Part shown: positions 1 to 64,000 of the stretch, piece by piece
Position numbering within the stretch: the stretch's first letter is position 1
Layout of the letters: every line of letters starts with the position of its first letter
IMG/VR virus record: IMGVR_UViG_3300021520_000002
Span: 186,001-250,000 of that record
DNA: 64,000 bases
Strand: one strand, 5' to 3'
The notes under the pieces: generated by a model
Told to the model about the DNA's origin: nothing
The model's input: the letters and a program-made list of their open reading frames with translations, nothing else
Database searches by the model: none
Position numbers and translations under genes: made by a program

Positions 1-2013
1 TCCTTTGAGACCCATCTTCCAAGCTTTAATATAAAGACCATAAACATCTTTAACAGTTGCTGAATTGGGAAGATTAATTGTTTTACTCATTCCCATAGAT
101 ATAAATGGTTGAATAGCGGCACACATCTTAACATGACCCATATAATCAATCATTCTTGTGCAACCTCTTGGATTCATAGAGGTATCAAATATTGCCATAT
201 GTTCATCTTTAACAATTGTACTATTTTCTAAGCTTCCATCTTCTTCAATAGTTTCTAATATTAATTTTATTTTTTGTTCTGTATAACCTAAATTTTCTAA
301 GGCTACTTCAACAATTGGATTCACAAATTTCAGAACTGCATTTTCAGAACCAGAAAGAGTTTTATATCTTATTAAGCTAAACTCCGGTTCCATTCCAGTT
401 GTATATGCTTCCATTAAACTTGAAATTGTTCCAGTGGGAGCAAGAAGAGTTACAGTTGCATTTCTGAATGGAGCTTGATTATCAATTAAATTTTTAATAT
501 TAAGCCAATGTTCATTCAATAATATTTCCATAGTTTTTATTATTGTTGATTTTTTTGCACCAGCAAATTGAACATCTAAATATTTAATATGTTTATTTAA
601 AACATTATAAAATGGTTCTTTATTTTCTTCAAATTTATCAAATGGTCCAAATATAGTTGCTAATTTATTACTTGTTTGATAAGCAATAGCTGTTAATAAT
701 CCTGTTAACATTCCAGTAAGAGTTCTAGCTTCATCACTATCATAAGGTAAACCAAGATACATTAATAATGCACCAAGATTTGTAAAACCAGCTCCTAGCG
801 GACGAAATTCTCTTGTGTTTTTCTTAATTTCTTCTGTTGGATATGAAGATTTATTAATTAGAATATCTTGCGCAATTATCATAATTTCAACAACTTCTTT
901 AAATGTAGGATAATCAAATTTAAAATTATTAGTATATTTGTCATATTTAAAGAATTTTAAAAGATTGATGCTTGCTAAGTTACAACTTGAGTTGTCTATG
1001 AATGCAAACTCTCCACATGGATTGGTACTGTTTATTTTGCCGCTATTTATACATGTGTGCCATTCATTAAAAGTATCACTAAATAAAATTCCTGGATCGC
1101 CATTTTTCCAAGCATGTTCTGCTATTTTTACTAATAAATCTCTAGCTTTATACTTAGTACAGTTTTCTCCAGTCTTTACAAATTTAGTATACCAATCTCC
1201 ATCTTCTTCTGCAGCTTTCATAAAAGCTTCACTTAATCTAACACTAATATTTGTATTCTGATAAAATGCTTCATCAGACATTTCATAACCTTCTCTAGGA
1301 ATAAATCCAGCATCTCTTAAAATTCTTAATTTTTCTTCTTCATGATCTTTAATTTCAATAAAGTCTTCTATATCTGGATGGTCAATATTCATACAAACCA
1401 TTTTTGCAGAACGTCTTAATGTACCAGCACTTTTTATAGTGCCTGCATCAACATCATGACATCGTAAAAAAGAACAAGGTCCAGAAGCATGACCACCCCT
1501 AGATACTGTTTCTTTTTTACTTCTTAATGGACTCATATTCATTCCAGTTCCACTTCCATGTTTAAATATTTCTGCTTCGACTCCAGCAACTTCAAAAATA
1601 GATTTCATATTATCATCAATTTTAAGAATAAAACATGCTGATGTTTGTGGTTCATCTGAAAGTCCAACATTAAAATATACAGGACTATTAAATGCAAAAT
1701 ATTGATGTATTTGATAGTATTTCAATTTGTAATTAAAATCAGGAAAATCTGTTTTGTCCTCTTCAAAATATCTTTGATCTCTTGCCCAATTCGTAATTGT
1801 ATCAGATACTCTATCAATCATTTGTTTAAGACTTGTTTCTTTTAATTTTGCATTATTACATAAATATCTACTTGCAACAATTGCAGCATGACCATCATCG
1901 AATCCTTCAGGAAAGTCAATATCTTCATTGAATGTAATTTTTCCTTCTTTATTCTTAATTTCGATATGCTTCTTTACAAATTTAATATTTTTATACGGAT
2001 CTAGTTCTGACAC
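1..2013 (-). CDS. nrdJ: Class II (adenosylcobalamin-dependent) ribonucleotide reductase, runs off the window start
   Basis: Not in ORF track. Manual translation from GTG at 2013 (SD GGAGG): FNSPVYFN..PQTSACFI..GSGTG..AGTIKSAGTLRRSAKM..GDPG..STNPCGE..SCNLAS..LAPTGTIS. Confidence 0.93.
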   Translation of the reverse strand, partial: MSELDPYKNIKFVKKHIEIKNKEGKITFNEDIDFPEGFDDGHAAIVASRYLCNNAKLKETSLKQMIDRVSDTITNWARDQRYFEEDKTDFPDFNYKLKYYQIHQYFAFNSPVYFNVGLSDEPQTSACFILKIDDNMKSIFEVAGVEAEIFKHGSGTGMNMSPLRSKKETVSRGGHASGPCSFLRCHDVDAGTIKSAGTLRRSAKMVCMNIDHPDIEDFIEIKDHEEEKLRILRDAGFIPREGYEMSDEAFYQNTNISVRLSEAFMKAAEEDGDWYTKFVKTGENCTKYKARDLLVKIAEHAWKNGDPGILFSDTFNEWHTCINSGKINSTNPCGEFAFIDNSSCNLASINLLKFFKYDKYTNNFKFDYPTFKEVVEIMIIAQDILINKSSYPTEEIKKNTREFRPLGAGFTNLGALLMYLGLPYDSDEARTLTGMLTGLLTAIAYQTSNKLATIFGPFDKFEENKEPFYNVLNKHIKYLDVQFAGAKKSTIIKTMEILLNEHWLNIKNLIDNQAPFRNATVTLLAPTGTISSLMEAYTTGMEPEFSLIRYKTLSGSENAVLKFVNPIVEVALENLGYTEQKIKLILETIEEDGSLENSTIVKDEHMAIFDTSMNPRGCTRMIDYMGHVKMCAAIQPFISMGMSKTINLPNSATVKDVYGLYIKAWKMGLKG

Positions 2014-2261
2014 TATATTTCCTCCATTGGGTGTTTTATTTTATATCGTTTATAAAATTCTTCATTAGTCATAGCTGTATTATTTTCAATAAAAATTGTT
2101 CGTCCTTTTTTATATTCACCTCTTGAAGCTCTCCAAATTTGTTCATAATCATCTATTAATTTATCACATTCATAACAAAAAAAATCACCTTTTATATTTT
2201 CAGGTGTATATACATTAATAATTCTTTTTAGTTCTTTATTACAATGTGGACATATTTCCAT
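2013..2261 (-). CDS. Small zinc-ribbon protein
   Basis: CPHC...CYEC; resembles neighbour 2239-2505. Confidence 0.65.
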   Translation of the reverse strand: MEICPHCNKELKRIINVYTPENIKGDFFCYECDKLIDDYEQIWRASRGEYKKGRTIFIENNTAMTNEEFYKRYKIKHPMEEI

Positions 2262-2505
2262 TATTTTCCTCTGATTTATATATTATTTTTGTTGGTATTT
2301 TCATTTCAGAATTAATATCTGTTACAATCATATTAACTTTAAAATTTTGTTTATTTTTTCTAGTATAATCTGCAGCTAAATTATAAATTTTATCACCTTC
2401 AATTTTAGAATTACAAAATGGACAACTATAATCAGATTCTTTAGTAGATATTATTGTAACACAATTTATTTCTGATAATTCTTTATTACAGTTGATACAG
2501 TTCAT
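2239..2505 (-). CDS. Small zinc-ribbon protein
   Basis: CINC...CPFC; SD GGAG; follows promoter motif at 2540. Confidence 0.65.
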   Translation of the reverse strand: MNCINCNKELSEINCVTIISTKESDYSCPFCNSKIEGDKIYNLAADYTRKNKQNFKVNMIVTDINSEMKIPTKIIYKSEENNGNMSTL

Positions 2506-2564
2506 TACTTCTCCTTAGATTATATTTACTAATAGTAAAATTTCTATATAAAAGATGAAACTTT

Positions 2565-3251
2565 TTATACTCCTTCTTTAACATCACCGTTTGGTAAAAT
2601 AACTTTATCTACTTCTTTTTTAAAAGTGTTAAAATTTTTAAGTTTTTTATAAATTTTTTGTTGTTCTTTTTGTATACTTTTTTTAGTTTCAGGTAAGTAA
2701 TATTTTGCATAACCTTTTTCGCCAAATTTATTTGAAAGATGATCAAAAGATCTTTGAATAAGTTGTTCTCTATCCATATCTAAATAATTATCTTTTCCAT
2801 AAAGATATGATCTTTTAATCATTAATTTTAGAGACGGTGTTTTATCACTATCTTGAATAATCTTTCCAAGTAGTGTTCTTGGAGTGTTAGGATTAGATGC
2901 ACGATGATCTTCACATGCATCGGCAATATCTTTAATTTGTTCTTCAGTAAACCATTTCTTAAGATTTTTGTCCGCTAATACGAATTTAGCAGAATTAATA
3001 TGATGTTCTTCTCTACCTTTTGGAATACCAACATCATGGTATGCTGCCGCCGCGAAAGTCATATTAACATCAACTTTTCTTTTTACAGCTAAATCTAATG
3101 CTGTATTCATAACTAATTTAACATGATCTTGCCGATGACCAGAATCATGTTTATCATACATGGGTATAATTTTTGATTCAATATATTCTTTTAATTCTGG
3201 ATTTACCAATTCTATATTTTCTACTTCAAATAAATAAGATATGCTAATCAT
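2565..3251 (-). CDS. HD-domain phosphohydrolase
   Basis: H..H, AAAYHDVG, EDHRAS, IQDSD motifs. Confidence 0.88.
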   Translation of the reverse strand: MISISYLFEVENIELVNPELKEYIESKIIPMYDKHDSGHRQDHVKLVMNTALDLAVKRKVDVNMTFAAAAYHDVGIPKGREEHHINSAKFVLADKNLKKWFTEEQIKDIADACEDHRASNPNTPRTLLGKIIQDSDKTPSLKLMIKRSYLYGKDNYLDMDREQLIQRSFDHLSNKFGEKGYAKYYLPETKKSIQKEQQKIYKKLKNFNTFKKEVDKVILPNGDVKEGV

Positions 3252-3268
3252 AATTAAGCTCCTAAATA

Positions 3269-3559
3269 TTATTTTCTATTATACCCATATTTATCTCGAA
3301 AAAAATTAAGATTATTTATAGACTTTTTTAAATTTTCAACATCTTGTTTTGGAGATGTTACTTGTTTTGGTATTTTCTGAACTGTTTTTTCTTTTTCATT
3401 ATAAAAATATCCTTTTGCTGGAAATTCTATTCTTTGTAATAAACGTGGTTTTGTTTCATAAGGTTCTTTTTCAAAACGAATTCCATTAAATGCTGGATTC
3501 CATACCCAATCAAGACCAGTGTTAGTTTCAAATTCAAATAAATACCCAATATTAATCAT
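3269..3559 (-). CDS. Hypothetical protein with MIxIxYLFE N-terminus shared with the neighbouring HD protein
   Basis: ORF with SD GGAG; N-terminal similarity to 2565-3251. Confidence 0.65.
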   Translation of the reverse strand: MINIGYLFEFETNTGLDWVWNPAFNGIRFEKEPYETKPRLLQRIEFPAKGYFYNEKEKTVQKIPKQVTSPKQDVENLKKSINNLNFFRDKYGYNRK

Positions 3560-3585
3560 AATTAAACTCCTTAAAATAAAATAAA

Positions 3586-3834
3586 TAAAAAAGTCTTGAG
3601 ACCCCTTTTCGGGATCTCAATATCACGGTCTTTCGACCGGTAGTAAAAGGTGACTAGTTCTTTTACCATCTCTTGAACCCATACATCTGGGTTAGACCGA
3701 TTCTGGAAAGGTTAGTTAAAAGATTAGTCAAATCTTTTTACACCTTTTCTCGTCCAGCAAGAGAGCTAGTTTCGAGACTATGATACAAAGTAATATATCA
3801 CTTAGGATATATTACCTTTCATAGACCTGTCTAT
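3586..3834 (-). ncRNA. Putative structured ncRNA (about 245 nt)
   Basis: Promoter motif at 3842-3851; at least 7 hairpins (e.g. CGGTC-GAAA-GACCG); terminal hairpin TTGAGATCCC/GGGGTCTCAA plus U-tract; no ORF in track. Confidence 0.6.
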
Positions 3835-3861
3835 TATATTAATTTCTATATGAAAAAGAAG

Positions 3862-4010
3862 AAAATAAAATAATGTTACTTTCGTAACATTATTCTTCCT
3901 GTTGGTGGGTTATGACCCCACCGGGTGCGCGATATCACACCTTACTAGTAGTGAGAATGACTCACTACAGATCAAATTTCATAGGCTTATATCGAGCCTC
4001 AAAATGATCA
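3862..4010 (-). ncRNA. Putative structured ncRNA (about 145 nt)
   Basis: Promoter motif at 4021-4030; hairpins GTAGTGAG/CTCACTAC and GGTGGG/CCCACC; terminator AATAATGTTAC-GAAA-GTAACATTATT plus U-tract. Confidence 0.6.
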
Positions 4011-4058
4011 TACTATATTAATTTCTATATCAAATCTTTGAATAACAAAAAGGCGGAG

Positions 4059-4766
4059 TTATCCGCCTGTTAATTGATTTATGATAAGCTGGATTTTCTC
4101 AGGGATAGGAGCATTGAGATCAGGTTCATTAGTTGATCTGTAAATATGTCTTAACTCAATAATTTCGTTAAGGCATATTCCACAACTATGAACATGTTTT
4201 TCAATAACTGTCCTTTCCTCAAGATCAGAGTCGAAGAAGGCATATTTAGCCAACAATTCTGGTTCAATATGTTTCTGATGTTTTTCTTTCATTAACCTAT
4301 TAAACCCAAGTTGGATAAGATGTGGTAACATTTTATCGTTTGGTCCTGCATCCGGAGGAATTTCAGTAAACATCCAATGTTTAGTTGTGATTAAGTCTTT
4401 TTTCCACCATTTCAATTTGTTCTTGTCATATTCATATTTGAATAGATAGAACTTAATTTTGAAAAGATGGTCTAAATCATCAATCTTTTTTACAACATCT
4501 TCCCGATATCCAGTCTGTTTAAAAGCCGCTTTAAGGTTCCATAGGAATGTAAAATTCCATAAGAACGAGAATATTAAATCAGGAACTTCATTGTAATCGT
4601 CTTTATCTATACCATAAATAATTTGATAGTTAACTGTCGATTCAAGATCGGAAAGAGTTTTTTTACACTGGATTATCATATCAATAGCGCGTGAGACCAA
4701 ATGTCTCATATCCACAAATACATATCCACGTTTTTCTAAATCTTTTATTACCAGATTTATTATCAT
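4059..4766 (-). CDS. Protein with C-terminal anti-sigma-like zinc finger (zf-HC2/ZAS)
   Basis: HIEPELLAKY...IEKHVHSCGIC matches H..HxxxCxxC; own promoter motif at 4831. Confidence 0.6.
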   Translation of the reverse strand: MIINLVIKDLEKRGYVFVDMRHLVSRAIDMIIQCKKTLSDLESTVNYQIIYGIDKDDYNEVPDLIFSFLWNFTFLWNLKAAFKQTGYREDVVKKIDDLDHLFKIKFYLFKYEYDKNKLKWWKKDLITTKHWMFTEIPPDAGPNDKMLPHLIQLGFNRLMKEKHQKHIEPELLAKYAFFDSDLEERTVIEKHVHSCGICLNEIIELRHIYRSTNEPDLNAPIPEKIQLIINQLTGG

Positions 4767-4851
4767 ATCTCCTCCTTTAATTTTTAAAATAATATATTAG
4801 AAACTTTATTGTTCCTAATTATACTATATCATTTCTATATGAAAAAGGAGA

Positions 4852-5079
4852 AAACAAAAAGAGAATTTTTTACGTGTCTCTATTCACGGGTTAGAACCAT
4901 TTTTCAGATTTTTATTATCTTAGGTTCACCAAACCTAGGGATTTTTCTCGATTCCCAATCGGACCAATTTGAAGGGTGGTCGTAGACGCTTTATTAAGCA
5001 TCTGGGGCACATAATGTTACTCCCCGTTCCCGTCAGCACTATTTGCGGTTCATATGCTGATCTTTATTAGTCCCTTGTA
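4852..5079 (-). ncRNA. Putative structured ncRNA (about 220 nt)
   Basis: Promoter motif at 5088-5097; GC-enriched serial hairpins (TCAGCA/TGCTGA, AGATGCTT/AAGCGTCT, TAGGTT/AACCTA); U-rich end; no ORF in track. Confidence 0.55.
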
Positions 5080-5113
5080 TTATATTAATTTCTATATGAA
5101 AAACTTGAAAATA

Positions 5114-5389
5114 AAAACCTTTTTAAGGCTGGTTAGGCCTGTTGATCGACTTTTTTAAATATTCGATCAACTGTTTATATGTAGCTGCAAAAGTTGAAGG
5201 ATGATCATATACATCATCCTCTTCATGTCTATATTCTACGATATATTTTTTCGTAGGCATATAAACAATATCTTTTACAGTTATTGAATATACTCCGTGA
5301 TCTCCACGGATGATGATTGGATTATCAATAACTTTTGCTAATCTAATCAATATATCCTCCTTAAAACCTTTTTAAGGCTGGTTAGGCCT
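5114..5389. repeat. 27-bp perfect direct repeat AAAACCTTTTTAAGGCTGGTTAGGCCT at 5114-5140 and 5363-5389
   Basis: Read directly; brackets the 75-aa ORF. Confidence 0.9.
5123..5350 (-). CDS. Hypothetical protein
   Basis: TTG start with SD GGAGG. Confidence 0.65.
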   Translation of the reverse strand: MIRLAKVIDNPIIIRGDHGVYSITVKDIVYMPTKKYIVEYRHEEDDVYDHPSTFAATYKQLIEYLKKSINRPNQP

Positions 5390-5409
5390 AAGACCTCTTT
5401 TTGAGCTGG

Positions 5410-5997
5410 TCAGGCTCCTTCTAAGCCGCGGGAGACTTCTAATACACGAAGATTCCAGATGTCTCTTCTATATCCATACATAAGTGATTCTGCATCTGGT
5501 AATGACCATTCAAGAATTTCCTTTATATTAAAAGGATAACCTGAGAATGGTAATTCACCAAGATAACAATCTCTTGTATGATTATAGTATTGACAATTAT
5601 CTAGAATACATTCAGCACATTCACAATCAGTACATACTATAGAACGGAATTTAACTATTATATAGTTTAATTCCATCTCAAGCATTTTCTGAAAGGATTC
5701 TGTGTTGAAAACGTGATGTGAAGTTCTGAAACAACGTTGATCAACATAACAGTCGCGTTCCCAATACGATTCAGTCAAGTAGTATTTATGTTCCCAACAC
5801 TCTTGACTACAGTCACCCGGTTCATCAGGAATATTTCCCCATTGATCCGAACTGTGATCGTGAATCGCAAGGCAATAATCATTGCACTTGCTTTCACCAT
5901 CTTTACAGTTGTGACAAATCGTATCGTTGATAGCTTCTGATGTTTGAAGAAACGATGAGATGATATCAATAACAATCCTATCAAAGGCTGTTTCCAT
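5410..5997 (-). CDS. Cys-rich hypothetical protein, start revised to METAFD
   Basis: SD GGAGG before ATG at 5997; several CxxC clusters. Confidence 0.7.
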   Translation of the reverse strand: METAFDRIVIDIISSFLQTSEAINDTICHNCKDGESKCNDYCLAIHDHSSDQWGNIPDEPGDCSQECWEHKYYLTESYWERDCYVDQRCFRTSHHVFNTESFQKMLEMELNYIIVKFRSIVCTDCECAECILDNCQYYNHTRDCYLGELPFSGYPFNIKEILEWSLPDAESLMYGYRRDIWNLRVLEVSRGLEGA

Positions 5998-6007
5998 AAT
6001 ATCCTCC

Positions 6008-6181
6008 TTAGTTTGTTTTCTTCTTTCTTTTTCTTCTTCCCCAACAGAGTTTATCATCAGTCCAAGATAAGTTTGTATCCATATCTGATATTCTAATACA
6101 TCCACATGGAAGTTTTTCGAGTTTCCAATTAGGATGATCAAAAGATATTTGAAGCATTCTTTCTTGTAACTCTTTTTCCAT
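6008..6181 (-). CDS. 57-aa basic protein (MEKELQERM...LPCGC...GRRKRKKKTN)
   Basis: Not in ORF track; SD AAGGAG; stop abuts SD of next gene. Confidence 0.65.
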   Translation of the reverse strand: MEKELQERMLQISFDHPNWKLEKLPCGCIRISDMDTNLSWTDDKLCWGRRKRKKKTN

Positions 6182-6332
6182 GTTCTTCTCCTTTATTTTT
6201 ATTTACAGAATAAGAGATATCGATATATAATCGACACCTTATTCCCATGCTTTAACGCGAAAGGTTTTATCGCAACTCAGCTCCGCACGTTTACATGTAC
6301 GCTGAGATTCTAACGGACTACAGTACGGAATG

Positions 6333-6404
6333 TTACTTCCGTGCTGCAGGACATGTTCCAGCATTGCCACAGGCTCCGCATGGAATTCTACACTTGGTAG
6401 TCAT
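6333..6404 (-). CDS. 23-aa Cys-rich peptide MTTKCRIPCGACGNAGTCPAARK, probably leaderless
   Basis: ATG just downstream of promoter motif 6416-6425; similar to C-terminus of 63482-63694. Confidence 0.45.
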   Translation of the reverse strand: MTTKCRIPCGACGNAGTCPAARK

Positions 6405-6570
6405 GTACTATATTAATTTCTATATGATCTTTTTGAATATACAAAAATCTTGCAGATATATAGAAATAATAGCCTATACAAAAATGGGTGGAGAAAGAAC
6501 CCCTTATTAAGTCTTCCATAGGCTGGAATTGTTATTAAGGTGCCTATGTTCTTTCCCCACAAATTAGAAA

Positions 6571-7074
6571 TTAATCATTAACAAATTCAAACTTAGCACC
6601 CAAAATTTTCAATTCAGCATATATATGAGTTAGTTCTCTTTCGATACCTTGCCGATATTCATCATCATTAATATCTCTAACTCCATCTGAATGTAAATGA
6701 TTATTATTTTTAATAGATTTGAATATAATTTTATCATAAGTATGAATAAATTCTCGACCAGTTTTAAATAAGGCATCTCCTAATTCTTTAAAACCAAAAT
6801 AATAAGTATAAGCAACAGAATCAAATATTGTTCTGTCTGTAATTAAAATATCATATTTAGTAGCTAAAGCAATTTCACTTTGCAATTGATTACAGAATAT
6901 CCAAAGTTGAGTTTCTTTTGGTTTATCTTTATTAAAACCTAAAGGAGAATGTTTTGCGTTCTCCATGAAAATTCCCACCGTCTTATTTGGATTTTCTATT
7001 TTCATTTGTTTAGCTAAATCAAATACTGCTGTTGATTTTCCTGTTCCGTGAGTTCCTGTAAAGCTTATTTTCAT
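6571..7074 (-). CDS. P-loop nucleotide kinase/ATPase (AAA_28/NadR-like)
   Basis: GTHGTGKST; DRTIFD; DGVR. Confidence 0.8.
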   Translation of the reverse strand: MKISFTGTHGTGKSTAVFDLAKQMKIENPNKTVGIFMENAKHSPLGFNKDKPKETQLWIFCNQLQSEIALATKYDILITDRTIFDSVAYTYYFGFKELGDALFKTGREFIHTYDKIIFKSIKNNNHLHSDGVRDINDDEYRQGIERELTHIYAELKILGAKFEFVND

Positions 7075-7086
7075 AAATTTTCCTCT

Positions 7087-8994
7087 TTATCCTATTAATG
7101 AATTTACAATGTATCTAATTTTTCCCATTGTAGATTTTGCAGCATCAACATCATCAAAATCAGTAGATGATGCATTTAAAGCATCCATTACATCATCAAC
7201 AAATACTGATGGAGTAAAAATTGTACAATTTAAATTTGGTATTCTTCCAACTCTATTTAAAAGTTGTGATAAATTTCCAATAGGTATTTTTTCATTACCT
7301 GCTTTTTCTACAGATGGAATATACATTTCTTTTATATTAATATTTAAACCTTCGCCGATATAATCTGTAGTTAATACTATGTCAATTTTACCTTTACTAA
7401 ATAAATCTTGAATTATAACATTATCTTGACTGTCTGAAGGATTAACTATTTGACCACCTTTTCTTTCTGGACCATACATAATTCCAAGTCTAGATCCAGC
7501 AGCATTACGAATCATTGGATTTGTAATATCGGCAATTCTTGATTCTCCAACAACAATATCAACATCTTTTTGACTATAAAATGGTTTTTTATATCCAATT
7601 CCAGTTTTAGGTTGAGGACCAACTTCATGACCAAATGATCCACCAAAACAATATTTAGCTATTTCATTTATTTTATATTTACTAAAGAAAACGAAACATA
7701 TTTGACGTTCCCCAGCGGCCAAAAACTTCTTTACAAGGTTTTTGGTATAATTAAAATCAGCAAGTTGATCATAACTTCTAATTTTTATTCTAGCTGTATT
7801 ACGTGCTTCAGATACAAAAGGAACTGTAAAATGTCTTCCATATGCTACATTATAAAATTTAATAAGTCTTGCTGCTGTTTTTTCATTTTGTGTACCAGTT
7901 AAACAAACCATTTTTGCAGATTTTGCCGCTCTACTTGATAATGTATAATCTATTGCAGATGATATTTGTTTAGCTCTTTTATCTACATTTTCTATACCAT
8001 CTGCTGTTAATTCTGCTTTTTGAATTTCATCAAAGACCATCAATTTTAAATTTTTCATTCTATCAATAAATCCTGGTGATGATTCATAAACAGTTATAAT
8101 AACTGGTTTTATTGTCCCACCTTTTTGATGATTTTCTATTGTATCTCCATCAGCATATTTAATTCCAACAAGTTGAGTAGTAACAAATTCTTTAACAGCT
8201 TTTGTAACATTTTCAAAATATTCAGTACTTAAATTTGAAATATTTTCTTCAATTTGTGTAATTTGTTCTGCCGGTAAATTTTGATATAATAATGTATTAC
8301 TAAGATTTGTTAAATTATTATATATATAATTTAATCTTTCTTTCAACGATTGTTGTGTTGCCATATTCATAACAGTTTGATTAAGATTATTATTAACCAA
8401 TCTGTACATATTTTGATTTTGTTGATTTGGTAAAAATAGATTTCGATTTTGATATTGAAAATAATTTATATATTGTAATATAAAAGAAACAAAATTTGTA
8501 ATAAATTCATCTTTAACAGTTTGATCAGTTAAAGCTCTAATTGGACTAAACCACATTATTTGTGGTAAATTTTCTGGATGCTCAATAATTTTTTTAAGAT
8601 TATCTAAAGTTACTTGAGCACGATGTATATCACCTGGATCATTAGGATTTGGTGGATCTAAAGTTACATTAATTCCTAATAATTTTTCAGCCCAATAAAC
8701 TATAACAGGAAGAGTTTTTCCTCCTCCAGGTGATTCAGTCATAATAAAAACATCATGATTTGGTTGACTAAGTTCATCAACTATTTGTCTTTGCCAACCA
8801 TGTAGTTGTGAAGAATTTTTAAGTTGAACTCCAACAGTTGCAGAACTAGGTTCCCACATAGTTTGACTTTGTGGTTGTGGAATTGGTGTAGCCTGTTGTA
8901 ATGGAGCTGGTTGTTGAGCTATATTTTGAAAATATGTATTTATATTTGCTCCTGAACCTAAAGAGCCTAAACTTTCAAGTAAACTTTTCTTCAT
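7087..8994 (-). CDS. Superfamily 2 helicase-like protein
   Basis: SPGGGKT, SPIRAL, FDEIQ, LTGT, GEGLNI, QLLNRVGR. Confidence 0.8.
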   Translation of the reverse strand: MKKSLLESLGSLGSGANINTYFQNIAQQPAPLQQATPIPQPQSQTMWEPSSATVGVQLKNSSQLHGWQRQIVDELSQPNHDVFIMTESPGGGKTLPVIVYWAEKLLGINVTLDPPNPNDPGDIHRAQVTLDNLKKIIEHPENLPQIMWFSPIRALTDQTVKDEFITNFVSFILQYINYFQYQNRNLFLPNQQNQNMYRLVNNNLNQTVMNMATQQSLKERLNYIYNNLTNLSNTLLYQNLPAEQITQIEENISNLSTEYFENVTKAVKEFVTTQLVGIKYADGDTIENHQKGGTIKPVIITVYESSPGFIDRMKNLKLMVFDEIQKAELTADGIENVDKRAKQISSAIDYTLSSRAAKSAKMVCLTGTQNEKTAARLIKFYNVAYGRHFTVPFVSEARNTARIKIRSYDQLADFNYTKNLVKKFLAAGERQICFVFFSKYKINEIAKYCFGGSFGHEVGPQPKTGIGYKKPFYSQKDVDIVVGESRIADITNPMIRNAAGSRLGIMYGPERKGGQIVNPSDSQDNVIIQDLFSKGKIDIVLTTDYIGEGLNINIKEMYIPSVEKAGNEKIPIGNLSQLLNRVGRIPNLNCTIFTPSVFVDDVMDALNASSTDFDDVDAAKSTMGKIRYIVNSLIG

Positions 8995-9212: not shown

Positions 9213-9495
9213 TTATTGTTTTGTAGCGGCATAAATTGCTGTTGCTGCATCAAGTGTTATTTCATAAGGACATTCATTTGCTGAAGTTACTTTTGTCCAA
9301 ATTGATTCAGCATGACGTGGATGCATTTTTGTTCTTGCTTCATTTTGAGCTTCTTTTGTGAAAAGTGATAATACAGCAGCTTGATCTCCATCATGATCCG
9401 CCCCCAATCTTGGTAAATCGAATGGACTAAGTCTCATACTTACTCCAGTCTTATCAACTCTTACATCTCCAGCTAACCAATTGTCTCTACTATTT
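9213..9495 (-). CDS. rpoC: RNA polymerase beta'-like subunit (second RNAP), exon 2, with catalytic GADHDGD
   Basis: Spliced junction KRDPV|NSRDNW...SPFDLPRLGADHDGDQ aligns with NRxPTLHR...NADFDGDQ. Confidence 0.85.
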
Positions 9496-10648
9496 CATTT
9501 GTGTTAATCTAAGATCGCGACTCTTAGACTTCTTCTTTTAAAATAAATAAAAGAAGAACCCATAGTTACCTATGGGATCAGACTATATCATCATCCTATT
9601 ATTTTCCTAAAAATTGTTCAAATAATTTAATATTATTCCATTTTTCATTTATTTCATCATTTTTTGATTCATTTTCAGTTTTTGATAATGGTCTAAGATT
9701 TTTTAATGACCAACATTTTTCAAAATTTGAATCTTCAAACGATTTGATATTAAAAGCTATTATTGGAACAATATGATCAATAACCCAATAATTACCATAA
9801 TTATTCCAATTCATTTTATCATCAAACTGTTTTTCAAGATGTTTCATAAGATCAGTAAGATTATATCCAACAAATTTTAACCAACTTTTTCCTTCTTTTT
9901 TACCTTTTAATATTCCCCAAATAGCTCTACTTACAAGTTTTCTTAATCTAAAAGAAGGATCTGTTTTGTATTTATTTTTGATGTATTCTTTTTTCTTTTC
10001 CATTATTTTATCTTTATTATTTTCAAAATATTTTCTATCTTGTTCTCTTTTTTTCTCTGGATGTTCTTTATAATAAGTTTTTTGTTTAGCTAAAAGTTCG
10101 TTTTTATTTTCTTCCCAATGAGCTTTTCGTTCATCCTGATGTTCTAAACAGTAATTTTTATGATATTCAACTCTTTCATCTTTGTGTTTTTCATAATATC
10201 GGTCAGTTTGAGCTTTATGTTTATCAGGATGATTTTTTCGATATTCTTTTACATTCAGATAATCACAAGGTTTACAATAATATTTATATTTTATTGTACC
10301 GTTTTTTGTTTTATATGCTGGAAATTCAATAATATCTTTTTCTTGTCCACATTTACCTCTACAAATTCTTGTTTTCATAATTTTATTATTCCTCCTAGAA
10401 ATTATTAAATGATGATATAGTCTAATTTAATAATTTCTATATAAGAATCTTAATTACTAAATAATAGGATGCCTCGCGCTTCCGTCCGCTTGGACGTACT
10501 CCCTTTCGGGATAGTCGTTACACCTTCAGTTAATATAGTTCGCAGCTATATTAAAAGCTTGGCTCGGTATTGTCCTATTTCTAGGAGTTTCACCGAATTC
10601 ACGAGGTTATTCGAATATCATTACTGATATAAGCCGCTTAATAGATTA
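9496..10648 (-). mobile_element. Group I self-splicing intron (1153 nt) with homing endonuclease in the P8 loop
   Basis: 5' splice U.G pair in P1 (CCGU/GCGG); P10 CUAUU/AAUAG; core elements GAAUUCGGUGAAA, AAUACCGAGCCAAG, GUAACGACUA, GAUAUAGUCU; P8 CAUCCUAUU/AAUAGGAUG; omega-G at 9496; removal restores frame. Confidence 0.9.
9599..10378 (-). CDS. Intron-encoded HNH homing endonuclease
   Basis: N-terminal Cys motifs; WVIDHIVP...NLRPL...NESKND; own SD and promoter motif at 10433. Confidence 0.88.
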   Translation of the reverse strand: MKTRICRGKCGQEKDIIEFPAYKTKNGTIKYKYYCKPCDYLNVKEYRKNHPDKHKAQTDRYYEKHKDERVEYHKNYCLEHQDERKAHWEENKNELLAKQKTYYKEHPEKKREQDRKYFENNKDKIMEKKKEYIKNKYKTDPSFRLRKLVSRAIWGILKGKKEGKSWLKFVGYNLTDLMKHLEKQFDDKMNWNNYGNYWVIDHIVPIIAFNIKSFEDSNFEKCWSLKNLRPLSKTENESKNDEINEKWNNIKLFEQFLGK

Positions 10649-12487: not shown

Positions 12488-12690
12488 CAAAAAGTTGGGA
12501 CAGAGATCCGGTTTCTCTGTCCCTTTTACTACTATCGTGCTCCTATTTCTATAGGAGCTTTCATTATTTACTGGTAGAGGCGCGCCCACTATCTTTCGCC
12601 AAGTCGACGCGTTGTTTTTGCGTATCTACCAGTATTAGGCGCTCGTGGCTAGCCAGTCCGTTTAACGGGGGCTGCCGATGGCGCGGACAT
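12488..12690 (-). ncRNA. Putative GC-rich structured ncRNA (about 200 nt)
   Basis: Promoter motif at 12698; stems TACTGGTAGA/TCTACCAGTA and GCTCCTAT/ATAGGAGC; terminator GGGACAGAGA/TCTCTGTCCC plus U-tract. Confidence 0.62.
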
Positions 12691-12721
12691 TATATTAATT
12701 TCTATATGAAAAACTTAAAAA

Positions 12722-13056
12722 TAAAAAACCCCCGTAAGGGGGAAGGTCTTTACGACATTAACTGTCGCTCTTATTAGAGTTCCTCAGTCTCCAATAGTTC
12801 CCATAGAGCCCTCTCATCCTATTGCTAGGACTTCTTTCTAATTTTACGAACTTGTCCCTATGGCGATAGTTCAACCAAGTATTTTTCAGACTTCAGAGAT
12901 TTCTCTCAACCCTTCCGGTCGTCTGAATTTCCTTGGAAATTTAAATCGGAGAAAACCGGAGTCGCTAGTCGTTTGACCTCGTCCGATTTTTCTCCTGTAA
13001 TATGAAATATCGACTGAAATCTCCACCGAGGAGATTTCTAACTTCATCTTACTAAA
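12722..13056 (-). ncRNA. Putative structured ncRNA (about 330 nt)
   Basis: Promoter motif at 13063; stems GAAATCTCC/GGAGATTTC, GGAGAAAA/TTTTCTCC, TTCAGAC/GTCTGAA, CCATAGGG/CTCTATGG; terminator CCCCC-TTAC-GGGGG plus U-tract. Confidence 0.6.
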
Positions 13057-13157
13057 AATATTATTTCTATATATAAATAGAGATTATCAAATTAATGTAT
13101 TTTATAATTTAATAGAGCTTCCTCGCCATTCCACGGAAGCTCTTATAAGACTATTGG

Positions 13158-46053: not shown

Positions 46054-46128
46054 TGGTGCCCAAGGTGAGAATTGAACTCACGACCTAGTGTTTTAGAGGC
46101 ACTCGCTCTACAACTGAGCTACTTAGGC
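46054..46128 (-). tRNA. Amber suppressor tRNA (anticodon CTA) with encoded CCA
   Basis: Acceptor GCCTAAG/CTTGGGC-A-CCA; D arm GCTC/GAGC; anticodon arm AGTGC-CTCTAAA-ACACT; T arm GTGAG-TTCAATT-CTCAC. Confidence 0.85.
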
Positions 46129-63694: not shown

Positions 63695-63756
63695 GTTCTC
63701 CTCCTAGAGTTTTTTGTTACTTTATTATTTCTATATGAAATCTTTAAAAATAAAAA

Positions 63757-63898
63757 CAAACAAAATTTTCATATGATACGAATATCACATGAAAATCTTG
63801 CCGGTAGAACAATTTCTTAAACCAGCAAGTGGTTCAGAACAGGAACATCTACAGCCTACTGTAGCGTCCTTCAACTAAAGGTTACCCTTTAATCTATA
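63757..63898 (-). ncRNA. Putative structured ncRNA (about 140 nt); 3' end of a related unit at 63945-64000
   Basis: Promoter motif at 63906; hairpins TAAAGG/CCTTTA, CTACAG/CTGTAG, AACCA/TGGTT; terminator TTTTCATGTGATA/TATCATATGAAAA plus U-tract. Confidence 0.58.
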
Positions 63899-64000
63899 CT
63901 TATTAATTTCTATATGAAAAGCTTGAATATCAAAAAAAGAAAATAAACAAAGAACTTATGTGATATAAATATCACATAAATCCTTCGCCAGTCGGAGCAA

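What the first reader, a model, noticed from the sequence alone, without database searches (positions are those of the whole stretch)
3586..5100. Cluster of separately promoted, ORF-less structured RNA genes
Seen: three units (4010-3862, 3834-3586, 5079-4852). Each begins just after ATATAGAAATTAATAT, is GC-richer than its flanks and packed with hairpins, and ends in a U-tract (after a clear terminator hairpin in the first two) that abuts the next promoter or gene. The units are not copies of each other, although AGTAACATT recurs in two of them and in the 6200-6408 leader. None resembles tRNA, tmRNA or RNase P by eye. Inference: a repertoire of phage small RNAs arranged like gene cassettes, possibly decoys or antitoxin/anti-defence RNAs.
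Basis: partly seen in the sequence, partly recalled or inferred. Interest (0 to 1): 0.78.

Follow-up and report, generated by a model that had tools for sequence, protein, structure and literature searches.

The report
Promoter-to-terminator RNA cassettes in jumbo phage
An uncultivated freshwater giant phage carries, in a fast-changing part of its genome, several short units with their own phage promoter and terminator that hold hairpin-rich RNA but no gene; they look real, similar small RNAs are already known from other giant phages, and their function is unknown.

Summary
The window lies in a 285.6-kb, 29% GC, phiKZ-like jumbo phage from lake metagenomes.

- **Promoter.** The 16-mer is the long form of a genome-wide phage promoter with core TATAGAAAT. 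It occurs 64 times on the gene strand against 9 expected, usually about 42 nt before a ribosome-binding site and start codon.
- **Units A and B.** A (4012-3862) and B (3834-3586) have no credible ORF and fold far better than shuffles (z about -7). Both end in strong hairpin-plus-U terminators.
- **Unit C.** C (5079-4852) also lacks an ORF but is weakly structured (z about -1.8). Its "U-tract" is mostly the T-rich upstream part of the next promoter.
- **Known RNA families.** No Rfam family matches any of the units.
- **Setting.** The units sit in a variable region between two conserved genes whose content differs in every relative found. The promoter-terminator modules are the only shared DNA, as with T4 PeSL cassettes.
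- **Wider class.** The genome holds at least 14 such units. Two outside the finding show compensatory base changes.
- **Limits.** A, B and C have no homologue anywhere I could search, so they have no covariation evidence. No transcripts were seen either.

B is best read as a terminator-ended leader of a two-gene operon, and A as a stand-alone RNA of about 150 nt. The decoy or anti-defence idea is untested. These are new RNAs of a known kind, of moderate interest.

The parts
4015..4030 (-). Phage promoter of unit A (16-mer; core TATAGAAAT at 4029-4021)
   Evidence: Exact motif; member of the genome-wide promoter family
3862..4012 (-). Unit A: ORF-less RNA of about 150 nt with five hairpins
   Evidence: MFE -56.2 kcal/mol, z -7.5; no ORF; no Rfam hit; a covariance model of A finds nothing else in the genome or in relatives
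3904..3922 (-). Hairpin 4 of unit A: 6-bp stem ending in three G-C pairs, 7-nt loop GUCAUAA; resembles an initiator-tRNA anticodon stem-loop
   Evidence: Loop census; 12 of 13 identical to E. coli metZ; unique in the genome; two of the region's three population SNPs fall here
3867..3896 (-). Terminator of unit A (13-bp stem, GAAA loop), followed by a U-run that merges into promoter B; its 3' arm carries AGUAACAUU
3836..3851 (-). Phage promoter of unit B
3586..3834 (-). Unit B: ORF-less RNA of about 250 nt with seven hairpins; leader of the 96-aa/HD operon
   Evidence: MFE -86 kcal/mol, z -6.5 to -7.1; no promoter lies between its terminator and the gene
3596..3620 (-). Terminator of unit B (10-bp stem, U6 after 3 nt), 25 nt before the ribosome-binding site of the 96-aa gene
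3269..3559 (-). 96-aa ORFan gene, reachable only by read-through of B's terminator; followed by the HD-domain gene at 2565-3251
5082..5097 (-). Phage promoter of unit C
4852..5079 (-). Unit C: ORF-less, weakly structured stretch of about 230 nt; AGUAACAUU lies in a 14-nt hairpin loop
   Evidence: z -1.8; no clear terminator
4823..4845 (-). Second, variant promoter (TATAGAAATGATATAGTATAAT) directly before the 235-aa gene
4059..4766 (-). 235-aa ORFan between units C and A, with a C-terminal HxxxCxxC motif; its terminator is at 4051-4068
6200..6425 (-). Promoter plus a 209-nt structured leader (unit D) of the 57-aa and 195-aa genes; AGUAACAUU overlaps a 6-nt hairpin loop
   Evidence: z -3.7
12490..12707 (-). 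Unit E: promoter (exact 16-mer), a 200-nt GC-rich (0.50) structured RNA and a terminator directly before a 60-aa gene. The whole cassette is absent from the closest relative
   Evidence: z -5.6
12715..13071 (-). Unit F: promoter, a 330-nt structured RNA and a terminator; conserved leader of the dUTPase / RNA polymerase beta' operon
   Evidence: Orthologues in L068/L069/L070/L073 with 12 compensatory pairs and a 42-nt core about 95% identical
63742..63915 (-). Promoter plus a 152-nt ORF-less RNA. Its tandem paralogue starts at window 63929 and runs past the window's end (genome 249929-250091)
   Evidence: 13 compensatory pairs between the two copies; z -6.5 and -6.7

Best explanation
Units A, B and C are short transcription units without ORFs in a phiKZ-like jumbo phage.

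**How they are built.** Each starts at a copy of the phage's own promoter, core TATAGAAAT. This is most likely the early class read by the virion RNA polymerase (inferred). Each unit runs through hairpin-rich, GC-enriched RNA. A and B end at an intrinsic terminator whose U-run merges into the T-rich upstream part of the next promoter.

**How the three differ.**
- A is a stand-alone structured RNA of about 150 nt.
- B is a 250-nt leader ending in a terminator. The 96-aa gene and the HD-domain gene behind it have no promoter of their own, so they can only be expressed by read-through. B would dampen or gate that operon and release a small RNA by premature termination.
- C is a long, weakly structured upstream transcript or leader in front of the second promoter of the 235-aa gene.

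**Where they sit.** The units are cargo of composite promoter-terminator modules in a hyperplastic region between an AAA_28 ATPase gene and the ribonucleotide reductase gene. Recombination between the 40-80-nt conserved modules probably swaps cassettes in and out (inferred).

**Shown:** the motif, the lack of ORFs, the predicted structure, the terminators, the cassette layout and the region's variability.
**Inferred:** the promoter class, the transcript ends, attenuation, and any action in trans, which remains unknown.
For: **Phage type.** Four split RNA polymerase beta/beta' genes lie in the window. The record is a 285.6-kb virus.

**Promoter.**
- TATAGAAAT occurs 64 times on the minus strand against 9.3 expected, with a conserved T-rich upstream element.
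- 34 of the 64 sites lie within 70 nt of a ribosome-binding site plus start codon, median 42 nt.
- The same motif drives tRNA genes.
- Relatives use the same motif.
- In RNA-polymerase-encoding jumbo phages, the motif that can be found bioinformatically is an AT-rich ~10-mer centred near -10 of early genes read by the virion polymerase (PMC7598289).

**Structure and lack of ORFs.**

**Terminators.**

**Read-through dependence.** No promoter lies between B's terminator and the 96-aa/HD genes, nor between the terminators of E and F and the dUTPase/beta' operon.

**The class is real and under selection.**
- Unit F is conserved at the same position in the closest relative, with 12 compensatory pairs and a near-invariant 42-nt core. 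The neighbouring dUTPase gene is only 66% identical in DNA.
- A tandem pair of units shows 13 compensatory pairs.

**Hyperplastic region.** Four lineages hold four different contents between the same two genes, and only the promoter modules match. In L035 an ORF-less unit lies between two copies of an 80-nt promoter module.

**Precedent.** Phage 201phi2-1 has 11 small RNAs, 8 of them made by premature termination in 5' UTRs (PMC11512511).
Against: - There is no transcript evidence. One metatranscriptome from a sample that holds the phage showed no coverage.
- A, B and C have no homologue in the phage collection, in IMG/VR, in the relatives fetched, or in their own genome. Population copies are nearly clonal. 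There is therefore no covariation for these three.
- No alternative antiterminator pairing longer than 4-5 bp was found for B, E or F. A regulated switch is thus unsupported, and the terminators may simply be leaky.
- The promoter class is inferred, not measured.
- C is barely more structured than chance.
Confidence: 0.6

Rival explanations
1. Trans-acting early small RNAs that work as decoys or anti-defence or host-takeover factors. Abundant, stable hairpin RNAs made at injection would bind or distract a host factor. One concrete version is that hairpin 4 of A imitates the initiator-tRNA anticodon stem-loop. It could then be bound or cut in place of that tRNA, for example by a tRNA-cutting toxin, or it could bind the 30S P site.
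For: - The units lie among fast-turning-over ORFan genes behind likely early promoters, which is the usual setting for host-takeover and counter-defence genes.
- Hairpin 4 of A matches E. coli tRNA-fMet at 12 of 13 positions, including the three G-C pairs and the CAU loop. It is unique in the genome.
- Two of the region's three population SNPs hit this hairpin.
- AGUAACAUU is displayed in hairpin loops of C and D, and its complement forms the 5' arm of A's terminator.
Against: - Only one of 57 hairpin loops looks like an anticodon loop, so mimicry is not a theme. The match was noticed after the fact.
- The SNP variant weakens the three G-C pairs rather than keeping them.
- There are no ToxI-like repeats, no Rfam match, no neighbouring toxin or defence-related protein family, and no long complementarity to other phage transcripts.
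- The host is unknown, so no target can be checked.
Confidence: 0.17
2. Functionless filler. The units would be cassettes that lost their gene, or scraps left by recombination between promoter-terminator modules. They would be transcribed only because a promoter happens to stand in front of them.
For: - A, B and C are found in no relative, and the whole 4.5-kb region is dispensable in three related lineages.
- C is barely structured.
- A relative carries a promoter-driven unit made of a group-I-intron fragment, which shows that scraps can end up behind promoters.
Against: - A and B have z about -7, are 8-9 points richer in GC than the genome, and hold five to seven near-perfect hairpins with GNRA loops. 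Decayed coding DNA in a 29% GC genome would not look like that.
- Sister units F and the 63742-63904 pair keep their helices through compensatory changes.
- The units have no similarity to any other part of the genome.
Confidence: 0.13
3. Hidden microprotein genes, or DNA-level elements such as transcription-primed replication origins.
For: - Short ORFs exist: 31-34 aa with GTG starts in C, and 43 aa in the 6200-6408 leader with a GGAG 4 nt upstream.
- Tandem promoters followed by structured DNA recall the origins of T4 and T7 (from general knowledge).
Against: - No ORF has ATG plus a properly spaced Shine-Dalgarno motif, whereas real genes here have strong ones.
- The candidate starts lie inside stable stems.
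- At least 14 units are scattered over 110 kb, too many for origins.
Confidence: 0.05

Closest known systems
Small RNAs of phiKZ-like jumbo phages mapped by ONT-cappable-seq (201phi2-1: 11 sRNAs, 3 intergenic and 8 from premature termination in 5' UTRs; PMC11512511)
   Same: The phage type is the same (split multisubunit RNA polymerases). The anatomy is the same: a phage promoter followed within about 250 nt by a terminator, with no coding sequence, either intergenic (like A) or in a 5' UTR (like B, E and F). One such RNA is conserved by position across genera, as unit F is here. Function is unknown there too.
   Different: Those RNAs were seen as transcripts, whereas these are only predicted. 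There is no sequence similarity. Here the units come in tandem runs, are longer and richer in hairpins, and lie in a variable cassette region.
PeSL (promoter-early stem-loop) cassettes of T4-like phages (PMC2839356, PMC4122927)
   Same: Both are composite conserved modules of promoter plus terminator stem-loop. They flank small ORFan genes in hyperplastic regions. Related phages differ by insertion, deletion or replacement of what lies between the modules. In both, the modules are the only shared DNA.
   Different: PeSL promoters are sigma-70-like and read by the host polymerase. Here the motif is phage-specific, and sigma-70-like sites are not enriched. PeSL cargo is protein-coding, whereas here several cassettes carry only structured RNA. 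Mini-circle intermediates could not be tested.
Early promoters of virion RNA polymerases in jumbo phages (PMC7598289)
   Same: Both are highly conserved AT-rich motifs of about 10 nt. They can be found bioinformatically upstream of many operons for replication and transcription genes, and they differ from phage to phage.
   Different: The class assignment here rests on analogy only. No start sites or timing data exist for this phage.
Processive antitermination or attenuator leader RNAs (for example HK022 put RNA, or terminator-containing 5' leaders; from general knowledge)
   Same: Both are structured RNA near a promoter, lying upstream of terminators that must be passed to express essential downstream genes. 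This is the layout of B, E and F.
   Different: There is no sequence or structural similarity and no Rfam hit. No alternative antiterminator fold was found. A is followed by a promoter, not a gene.
Phage RNA decoys such as pseudo-ToxI antitoxin mimics and RNA anti-CRISPRs (from general knowledge)
   Same: Both are small phage-encoded non-coding RNAs with their own promoter, in accessory regions.
   Different: Those decoys mimic a repeat unit of a host system. Here there are no repeats, and the host and its systems are unknown. The only mimic-like feature is one hairpin of A.

Membership tests
Jumbo-phage early (virion RNA polymerase) promoter | Phage encodes split multisubunit RNA polymerase subunits | tested here: met
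   PHROG RNA polymerase beta-subunit hits for four window ORFs. A beta'-like catalytic region is seen in alignment A3.
Jumbo-phage early (virion RNA polymerase) promoter | Conserved AT-rich ~10-nt motif, over-represented and lying upstream of many operons | tested here: met
   TATAGAAAT occurs 64 times against 9.3 expected on the gene strand. 34 sites lie within 70 nt of a ribosome-binding site plus start codon.
Jumbo-phage early (virion RNA polymerase) promoter | Transcription starts about 10 nt downstream, early in infection and independent of the host polymerase | not testable with these tools
   The phage is uncultivated, and the RNA run showed no coverage.
Phage sRNA / 5'UTR-derived sRNA (as in 201phi2-1) | Promoter followed by a terminator within about 250 nt, with no coding sequence between | tested here: met
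   Met for A and B. C lacks a clear terminator.
Phage sRNA / 5'UTR-derived sRNA (as in 201phi2-1) | A discrete, enriched transcript is observed | tested here: inconclusive
   One 67-Mb metatranscriptome (X12) was laid on 1800-7300 and showed no coverage of the units. RNA runs from samples holding the phage held none of the sampled words.
PeSL-type regulatory cassette | Conserved composite of promoter and terminator stem-loop between small genes | tested here: met
   Promoter modules of 41-55 nt are repeated. Terminator hairpins stand 12-20 nt upstream of the motif at 4051-4068, 3867-3896 and elsewhere.
PeSL-type regulatory cassette | Located in a hyperplastic region whose content differs among close relatives | tested here: met
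   The window, L035, L047 and L012 each hold a different insert between the AAA_28 and ribonucleotide reductase genes.
PeSL-type regulatory cassette | Sigma-70-like early promoter read by the host polymerase | tested here: not met
   The conserved core is TATAGAAAT. Sigma-70-like sites number 18 against 16.4 in shuffles.
PeSL-type regulatory cassette | Mini-circle recombination intermediates | not testable with these tools
   Contig data only; the sole joint was at the promoter repeat.
Any Rfam family (tRNA, tmRNA, RNase P, 6S, riboswitches, ribozymes, group I intron) | Covariance-model match | tested here: not met
   There was no hit at gathering score or at E up to 10 within 3300-6600. As a positive control, the same search finds tRNAs and a group I intron in a relative.
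Type III antitoxin RNA (ToxI-like) | Tandem direct repeats of about 36 nt next to a toxin endoribonuclease gene | tested here: not met
   The units hold no internal direct repeats. The neighbouring proteins have no Pfam family.
RNA anti-CRISPR / solitary repeat unit | Hairpin matching the CRISPR repeat of the host | not testable with these tools
   The host is unknown.
Initiator tRNA (mimic, not member) | Full cloverleaf recognised by tRNA models | tested here: not met
   ARAGORN and Rfam find no tRNA in the units.
Initiator tRNA (mimic, not member) | Anticodon stem-loop with three G-C pairs next to a 7-nt loop NUCAUAA | tested here: met
   Hairpin 4 of A matches E. coli metZ at 12 of 13 positions. 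It is the only such loop among 57 hairpins.

The most novel reading that the evidence does not exclude
The phage keeps a fast-evolving set of RNA-only cassettes, exchanged by recombination at promoter-terminator modules. They would be expressed at the moment of DNA injection as decoys against host RNA-directed or translation-directed defences. Hairpin 4 of unit A would be a mimic of the initiator-tRNA anticodon arm. That would be an integron-like system whose cargo is RNA rather than protein.
Probability: 0.1. Interest if true: 0.8.

Novelty: new variant of a known kind. Interest (0 to 1): 0.5.

Why it matters
Small RNAs of giant phages have only recently been seen in transcript maps, and none has a known function. 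This genome adds three things.

- **Cassettes can carry RNA alone.** Such RNAs can be cargo of the same promoter-terminator cassettes that shuffle orphan genes. The accessory gene pool of phages would then include RNA-only modules that protein-based annotation misses.
- **Two families are ready for study.** Unit F, the leader of the phage RNA polymerase beta' operon, and the 63742-63904 tandem pair both show compensatory changes. They could be tested as regulators of the phage's own transcription machinery.
- **The promoter makes more findable.** The consensus allows such units to be found by sequence alone in related uncultivated phages.

For units A-C themselves the value is lower. They are lineage-specific, and their function cannot be read from sequence.

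Tried and rejected
**Searches for homologues of A, B and C**
- blastn of 3300-6600 against 50,697 phage records gave no match.
- An IMG/VR scan for the 18-mer promoter gave six chance hits in unrelated AT-rich contigs.
- Neighbouring proteins gave nothing. The 235-aa and 96-aa proteins are ORFans. The 635-aa helicase query found no related contig in IMG/VR.
- Relatives found through the RNA polymerase beta' and ribonucleotide reductase genes lack units A-D by blastn.
- A covariance model of A found nothing in its own genome or in 355 kb of relatives.
- The exact 19-mer of A's hairpin 4 is absent from IMG/VR.

**Population variation for covariation**
- Contigs from other samples and four runs are nearly identical. 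Three SNPs fall in or beside the units, too few to use.

**Transcript evidence**
- No listed RNA run held the stretch, and the one that was laid showed nothing.

**Other readings of the units**
- Group I intron or intron debris: the phage has introns, but the units share nothing with them.
- A changed genetic code that could hide ORFs: the genome uses TAA, TAG and TGA as stops, and recoding adds no ORF to the units.
- A tRNA-mimicry theme: only one anticodon-like loop was found.
- Riboswitch-like alternative folds: none beyond 4-5 bp.

**Side leads that failed**
- A Csx3-like reading of a 98-aa cassette protein in L035 was my own recollection, and Pfam gave no support.
- An IMG/VR scan for the conserved 16-mer of unit F gave chance hits only.
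Full report
**Context.** The window is bases 186001-250000 of a 285,572-base IMG/VR virus record with 29.4% GC. Several lake and freshwater metagenomes hold it. Four window ORFs match phage RNA polymerase beta-subunit families. One of them aligns with a beta'-type catalytic region. It is therefore a phiKZ-like jumbo phage with its own split multisubunit RNA polymerases.

**The motif is a promoter family.**
- ATATAGAAATTAATAT occurs exactly five times in the window, all on the minus strand. There are 12 sites with up to two mismatches, against 1.7 expected.
- The 18-mer form occurs nowhere else in the genome.
- Its core, TATAGAAAT, is genome-wide: 64 sites on the minus strand against 9.3 expected, and 20 on the plus strand against 7.4.
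- The core has a conserved T-rich upstream element and an AATA-type downstream element.
- 34 of the 64 minus-strand sites stand within 70 nt of a Shine-Dalgarno motif plus start codon of an ORF of at least 40 aa, median distance 42 nt.
- The motif also precedes tRNA genes, and related phages use it.
- The literature describes exactly this for RNA-polymerase-encoding jumbo phages. The one motif that can be found bioinformatically is a phage-specific AT-rich ~10-mer centred near -10 of early genes, read by the virion polymerase (PMC7598289).
- I therefore read it as the phage's early promoter. This is an inference, because no start sites are known. Sigma-70-like sites are not enriched in the region.

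**The three units.**
- Unit A (4012-3862) folds into five hairpins with MFE -56.2 kcal/mol and z -7.5. The last hairpin has a 13-bp stem and a GAAA loop, followed by a U-run that continues into the upstream element of promoter B.
- Unit B (3834-3586) has seven hairpins and z -6.5 to -7.1. It ends in a 10-bp GC-rich terminator at 3620-3596.
- Unit C (5079-4852) has z only -1.7 to -1.8, has no clear terminator, and is followed by a second, variant promoter for the 235-aa gene.
- Their GC content is 0.37-0.39 against 0.294 for the genome. Background 150-nt windows have mean z -0.69, sd 1.58.
- No ORF exceeds 34 aa, and none has ATG with a Shine-Dalgarno motif, under the standard code or with TAG or TGA as sense. 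The genome itself uses all three stop codons.
- Rfam gives nothing at gathering score or at E up to 10.
- The units share only their promoter modules and the 9-mer AGTAACATT. That 9-mer is present in A, C and the 6200-6408 leader, and a comparable sharing arose in 4 of 2000 shuffles.
- In C and in the leader the 9-mer lies in or overlaps a hairpin loop. In A it is the 3' arm of the terminator.

**B is a leader as well as a possible small RNA.** B's terminator is followed after 25 nt by the ribosome-binding site of a 96-aa ORFan, and then by an HD-domain gene. No promoter lies in between. Both genes therefore depend on read-through. The same layout recurs at 12490-13071. There, units F and E, each with promoter and terminator, precede a 60-aa gene, the dUTPase gene and the RNA polymerase beta' gene. 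I found no alternative antiterminator pairing longer than 4-5 bp. Regulated switching is thus not supported, and leaky termination or a protein factor remain possible.

**The class is wider than the finding.** A scan of promoter sites with long gene-less downstream stretches found at least 14 such units in the genome, often in tandem before a gene. Most have z between -3.5 and -7.5.

Two of them give the comparative evidence that A-C lack.
- The tandem pair at window 63742-63904 and genome 249929-250091 are paralogues with 13 compensatory pairs over four helices. A covariance model built from them finds a weak third copy at E 0.003.
- Unit F has orthologues in the closest relative lineage (L068, L069, L070, L073), at the same place upstream of the dUTPase/beta' operon. 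These show 12 compensatory pairs and a 42-nt core that is about 95% identical. The adjacent dUTPase gene is only 66% identical in DNA.

Structured RNAs behind this promoter are therefore under selection in this phage group.

**Cassette setting.**
- Relatives were reached through the RNA polymerase beta' and ribonucleotide reductase genes.
- Between the conserved AAA_28 ATPase gene and the reductase gene, each lineage holds something different:
  - L012 has about 200 nt with one promoter.
  - L047 has a NUDIX gene plus a structured leader.
  - L035 has a promoter-driven unit with a group-I-intron fragment, a 98-aa gene and a structured leader.
  - The window has 4.5 kb holding units D, C, A and B together with ORFans.
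- Only the promoter and terminator modules match. For example, window 3870-3832 and L035 7642-7680 are 97% identical over 39 nt, with unrelated cargo on either side.
- In L035 an ORF-less unit lies between two copies of an 80-nt promoter module.
- Unit E with its 60-aa gene is absent from the L035 lineage, which marks it as an inserted cassette.
- This is the logic of the PeSL cassettes of T4-like phages (PMC2839356). Here it works with a phage-specific promoter, and in several cassettes the cargo is RNA only.

**Limits for A, B and C.**
- No homologue was found by blastn against the phage collection.
- IMG/VR pattern scans gave nothing, and searches with neighbouring proteins gave nothing.
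- There was no blastn match in any relative.
- A covariance model of A found nothing.
- Contigs of the same phage from other samples are nearly identical.
- One contig (L013) differs at three positions in 1072 nt. Two of them fall in hairpin 4 of A. One changes a G-C pair to G-U, and the other breaks the loop-closing pair.
- The single metatranscriptome that could be laid showed no coverage.
- For A-C, therefore, neither covariation nor transcription is shown.

**A lead, not a finding.** Hairpin 4 of A has a stem ending in three G-C pairs and the loop GUCAUAA. It matches the anticodon stem-loop of E. coli initiator tRNA at 12 of 13 positions. It is unique in the genome. It is the only anticodon-like loop among 57 hairpins, and I noticed it after the fact. 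That three G-C pairs mark initiator tRNAs is established knowledge. It gives a testable form to the decoy idea, but it does not support that idea by itself.

**Comparison with known systems.** In anatomy, the nearest described things are the small RNAs of phiKZ-like phages defined by a start site followed closely by a terminator. In 201phi2-1 there are 11, of which 8 arise by premature termination in 5' UTRs, and one is conserved by position across genera (PMC11512511). A fits the intergenic type. B, E and F fit the 5' UTR type. The cassette setting matches PeSLs, apart from the promoter type and the RNA cargo. Membership in any Rfam family, in ToxI-like antitoxins and in tRNAs was tested and not met.

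**Verdict.** A and B are convincing structured RNA units without ORFs, and C is a weak one. They belong to a genome-wide class of promoter-to-terminator RNA units in a jumbo phage. Two members of that class show structural conservation. The anti-defence reading is possible but unsupported. These are new RNAs and a new arrangement of a known kind, of moderate interest.

Noticed in passing
window 9492-10644 (minus strand): The RNA polymerase beta'-like gene is split by a group I intron of about 1.15 kb. The intron carries a 259-aa ORF (9599-10378) with its own TATAGAAAT promoter. Exon 1 ends at about 10645 and exon 2 starts at about 9491, just before the catalytic motif. The gene is uninterrupted in L035. 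L012 has a different, ORF-less intron at another site (Rfam RF00028, 85 bits). Another copy of the intron family lies at genome 89097-90199.
   Followed up: partly
window 12715-13071 (minus strand): Unit F is a 330-nt structured RNA with promoter and terminator, upstream of the dUTPase / RNA polymerase beta' operon. It is conserved in the L035-type phage, with 12 compensatory pairs and a near-invariant 42-nt core. It is a candidate leader regulating the non-virion polymerase operon.
   Followed up: yes
window 12490-12707 (minus strand): Unit E has the exact 16-mer promoter, a 200-nt RNA with 50% GC (z -5.6) and a terminator directly before a 60-aa zinc-ribbon-like gene. The whole cassette is missing in the closest relative.
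   Followed up: partly
window 63742-64000 and genome 249929-250091 (minus strand): Two tandem 152-nt ORF-less units are paralogues with 13 compensatory pairs. A covariance model finds a weak third copy at genome 263405-263531.
   Followed up: yes
window 46054-46128 (minus strand): There is a tRNA with anticodon CTA, an amber suppressor that ARAGORN labels Pyl. Yet TAG ends 28 of 202 long ORFs, and reading TAG as sense adds little ORF length.
   Followed up: partly
window 4059-4766 (minus strand): The 235-aa ORFan between units C and A has a C-terminal HxxxCxxC motif. ESM Atlas neighbours include zf-HC2 anti-sigma-factor clusters (score 0.92). This is a lead only; Pfam finds nothing.
   Followed up: partly
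window 3559, window 3251 and L047 553: Three unrelated cassette proteins start with nearly the same peptide, MI(S/N)I.YLFE. They are the 96-aa ORFan, the HD-domain protein and a NUDIX protein of a relative. Either the recombination boundary lies inside the first codons, or they share an N-terminal signal.
   Followed up: no
window 5114-5140 and 5363-5389: An exact 27-nt repeat, a terminator-like module, follows the 75-aa and 195-aa genes. A similar sequence follows a cassette gene in L035 (6329-6382).
   Followed up: no
L035 8141-8262, L047 1115-1232, L025 847-975: A conserved structured leader lies behind the phage promoter, upstream of the ribonucleotide reductase gene. It has a closing stem, a conserved hairpin and a C-rich-loop hairpin, with 9 compensatory pairs. 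It has no Rfam match and is absent from the window phage.
   Followed up: partly
L035 7311-7640: A promoter-driven ORF-less unit with a terminator contains a fragment similar to the core of the phage's group I introns. It gets no Rfam group I hit at E up to 1.
   Followed up: partly
L068 4636-4701: The L068-type copy of unit F carries a tRNA-like insertion of about 70 nt (Rfam tRNA 18 bits; no ARAGORN call). The L069-type copy and the window copy lack it.
   Followed up: partly
L030 9374-9600: A promoter is followed by an RNA that begins and ends like a tRNA (acceptor and T-arm) but has an insert of about 110 nt. ARAGORN does not call it.
   Followed up: no
window 3907, 3917 and 3551 compared with L013: The only three differences in 1072 nt between two population copies cluster here. 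Two are in hairpin 4 of unit A, and one changes codon 3 of the 96-aa gene.
   Followed up: partly
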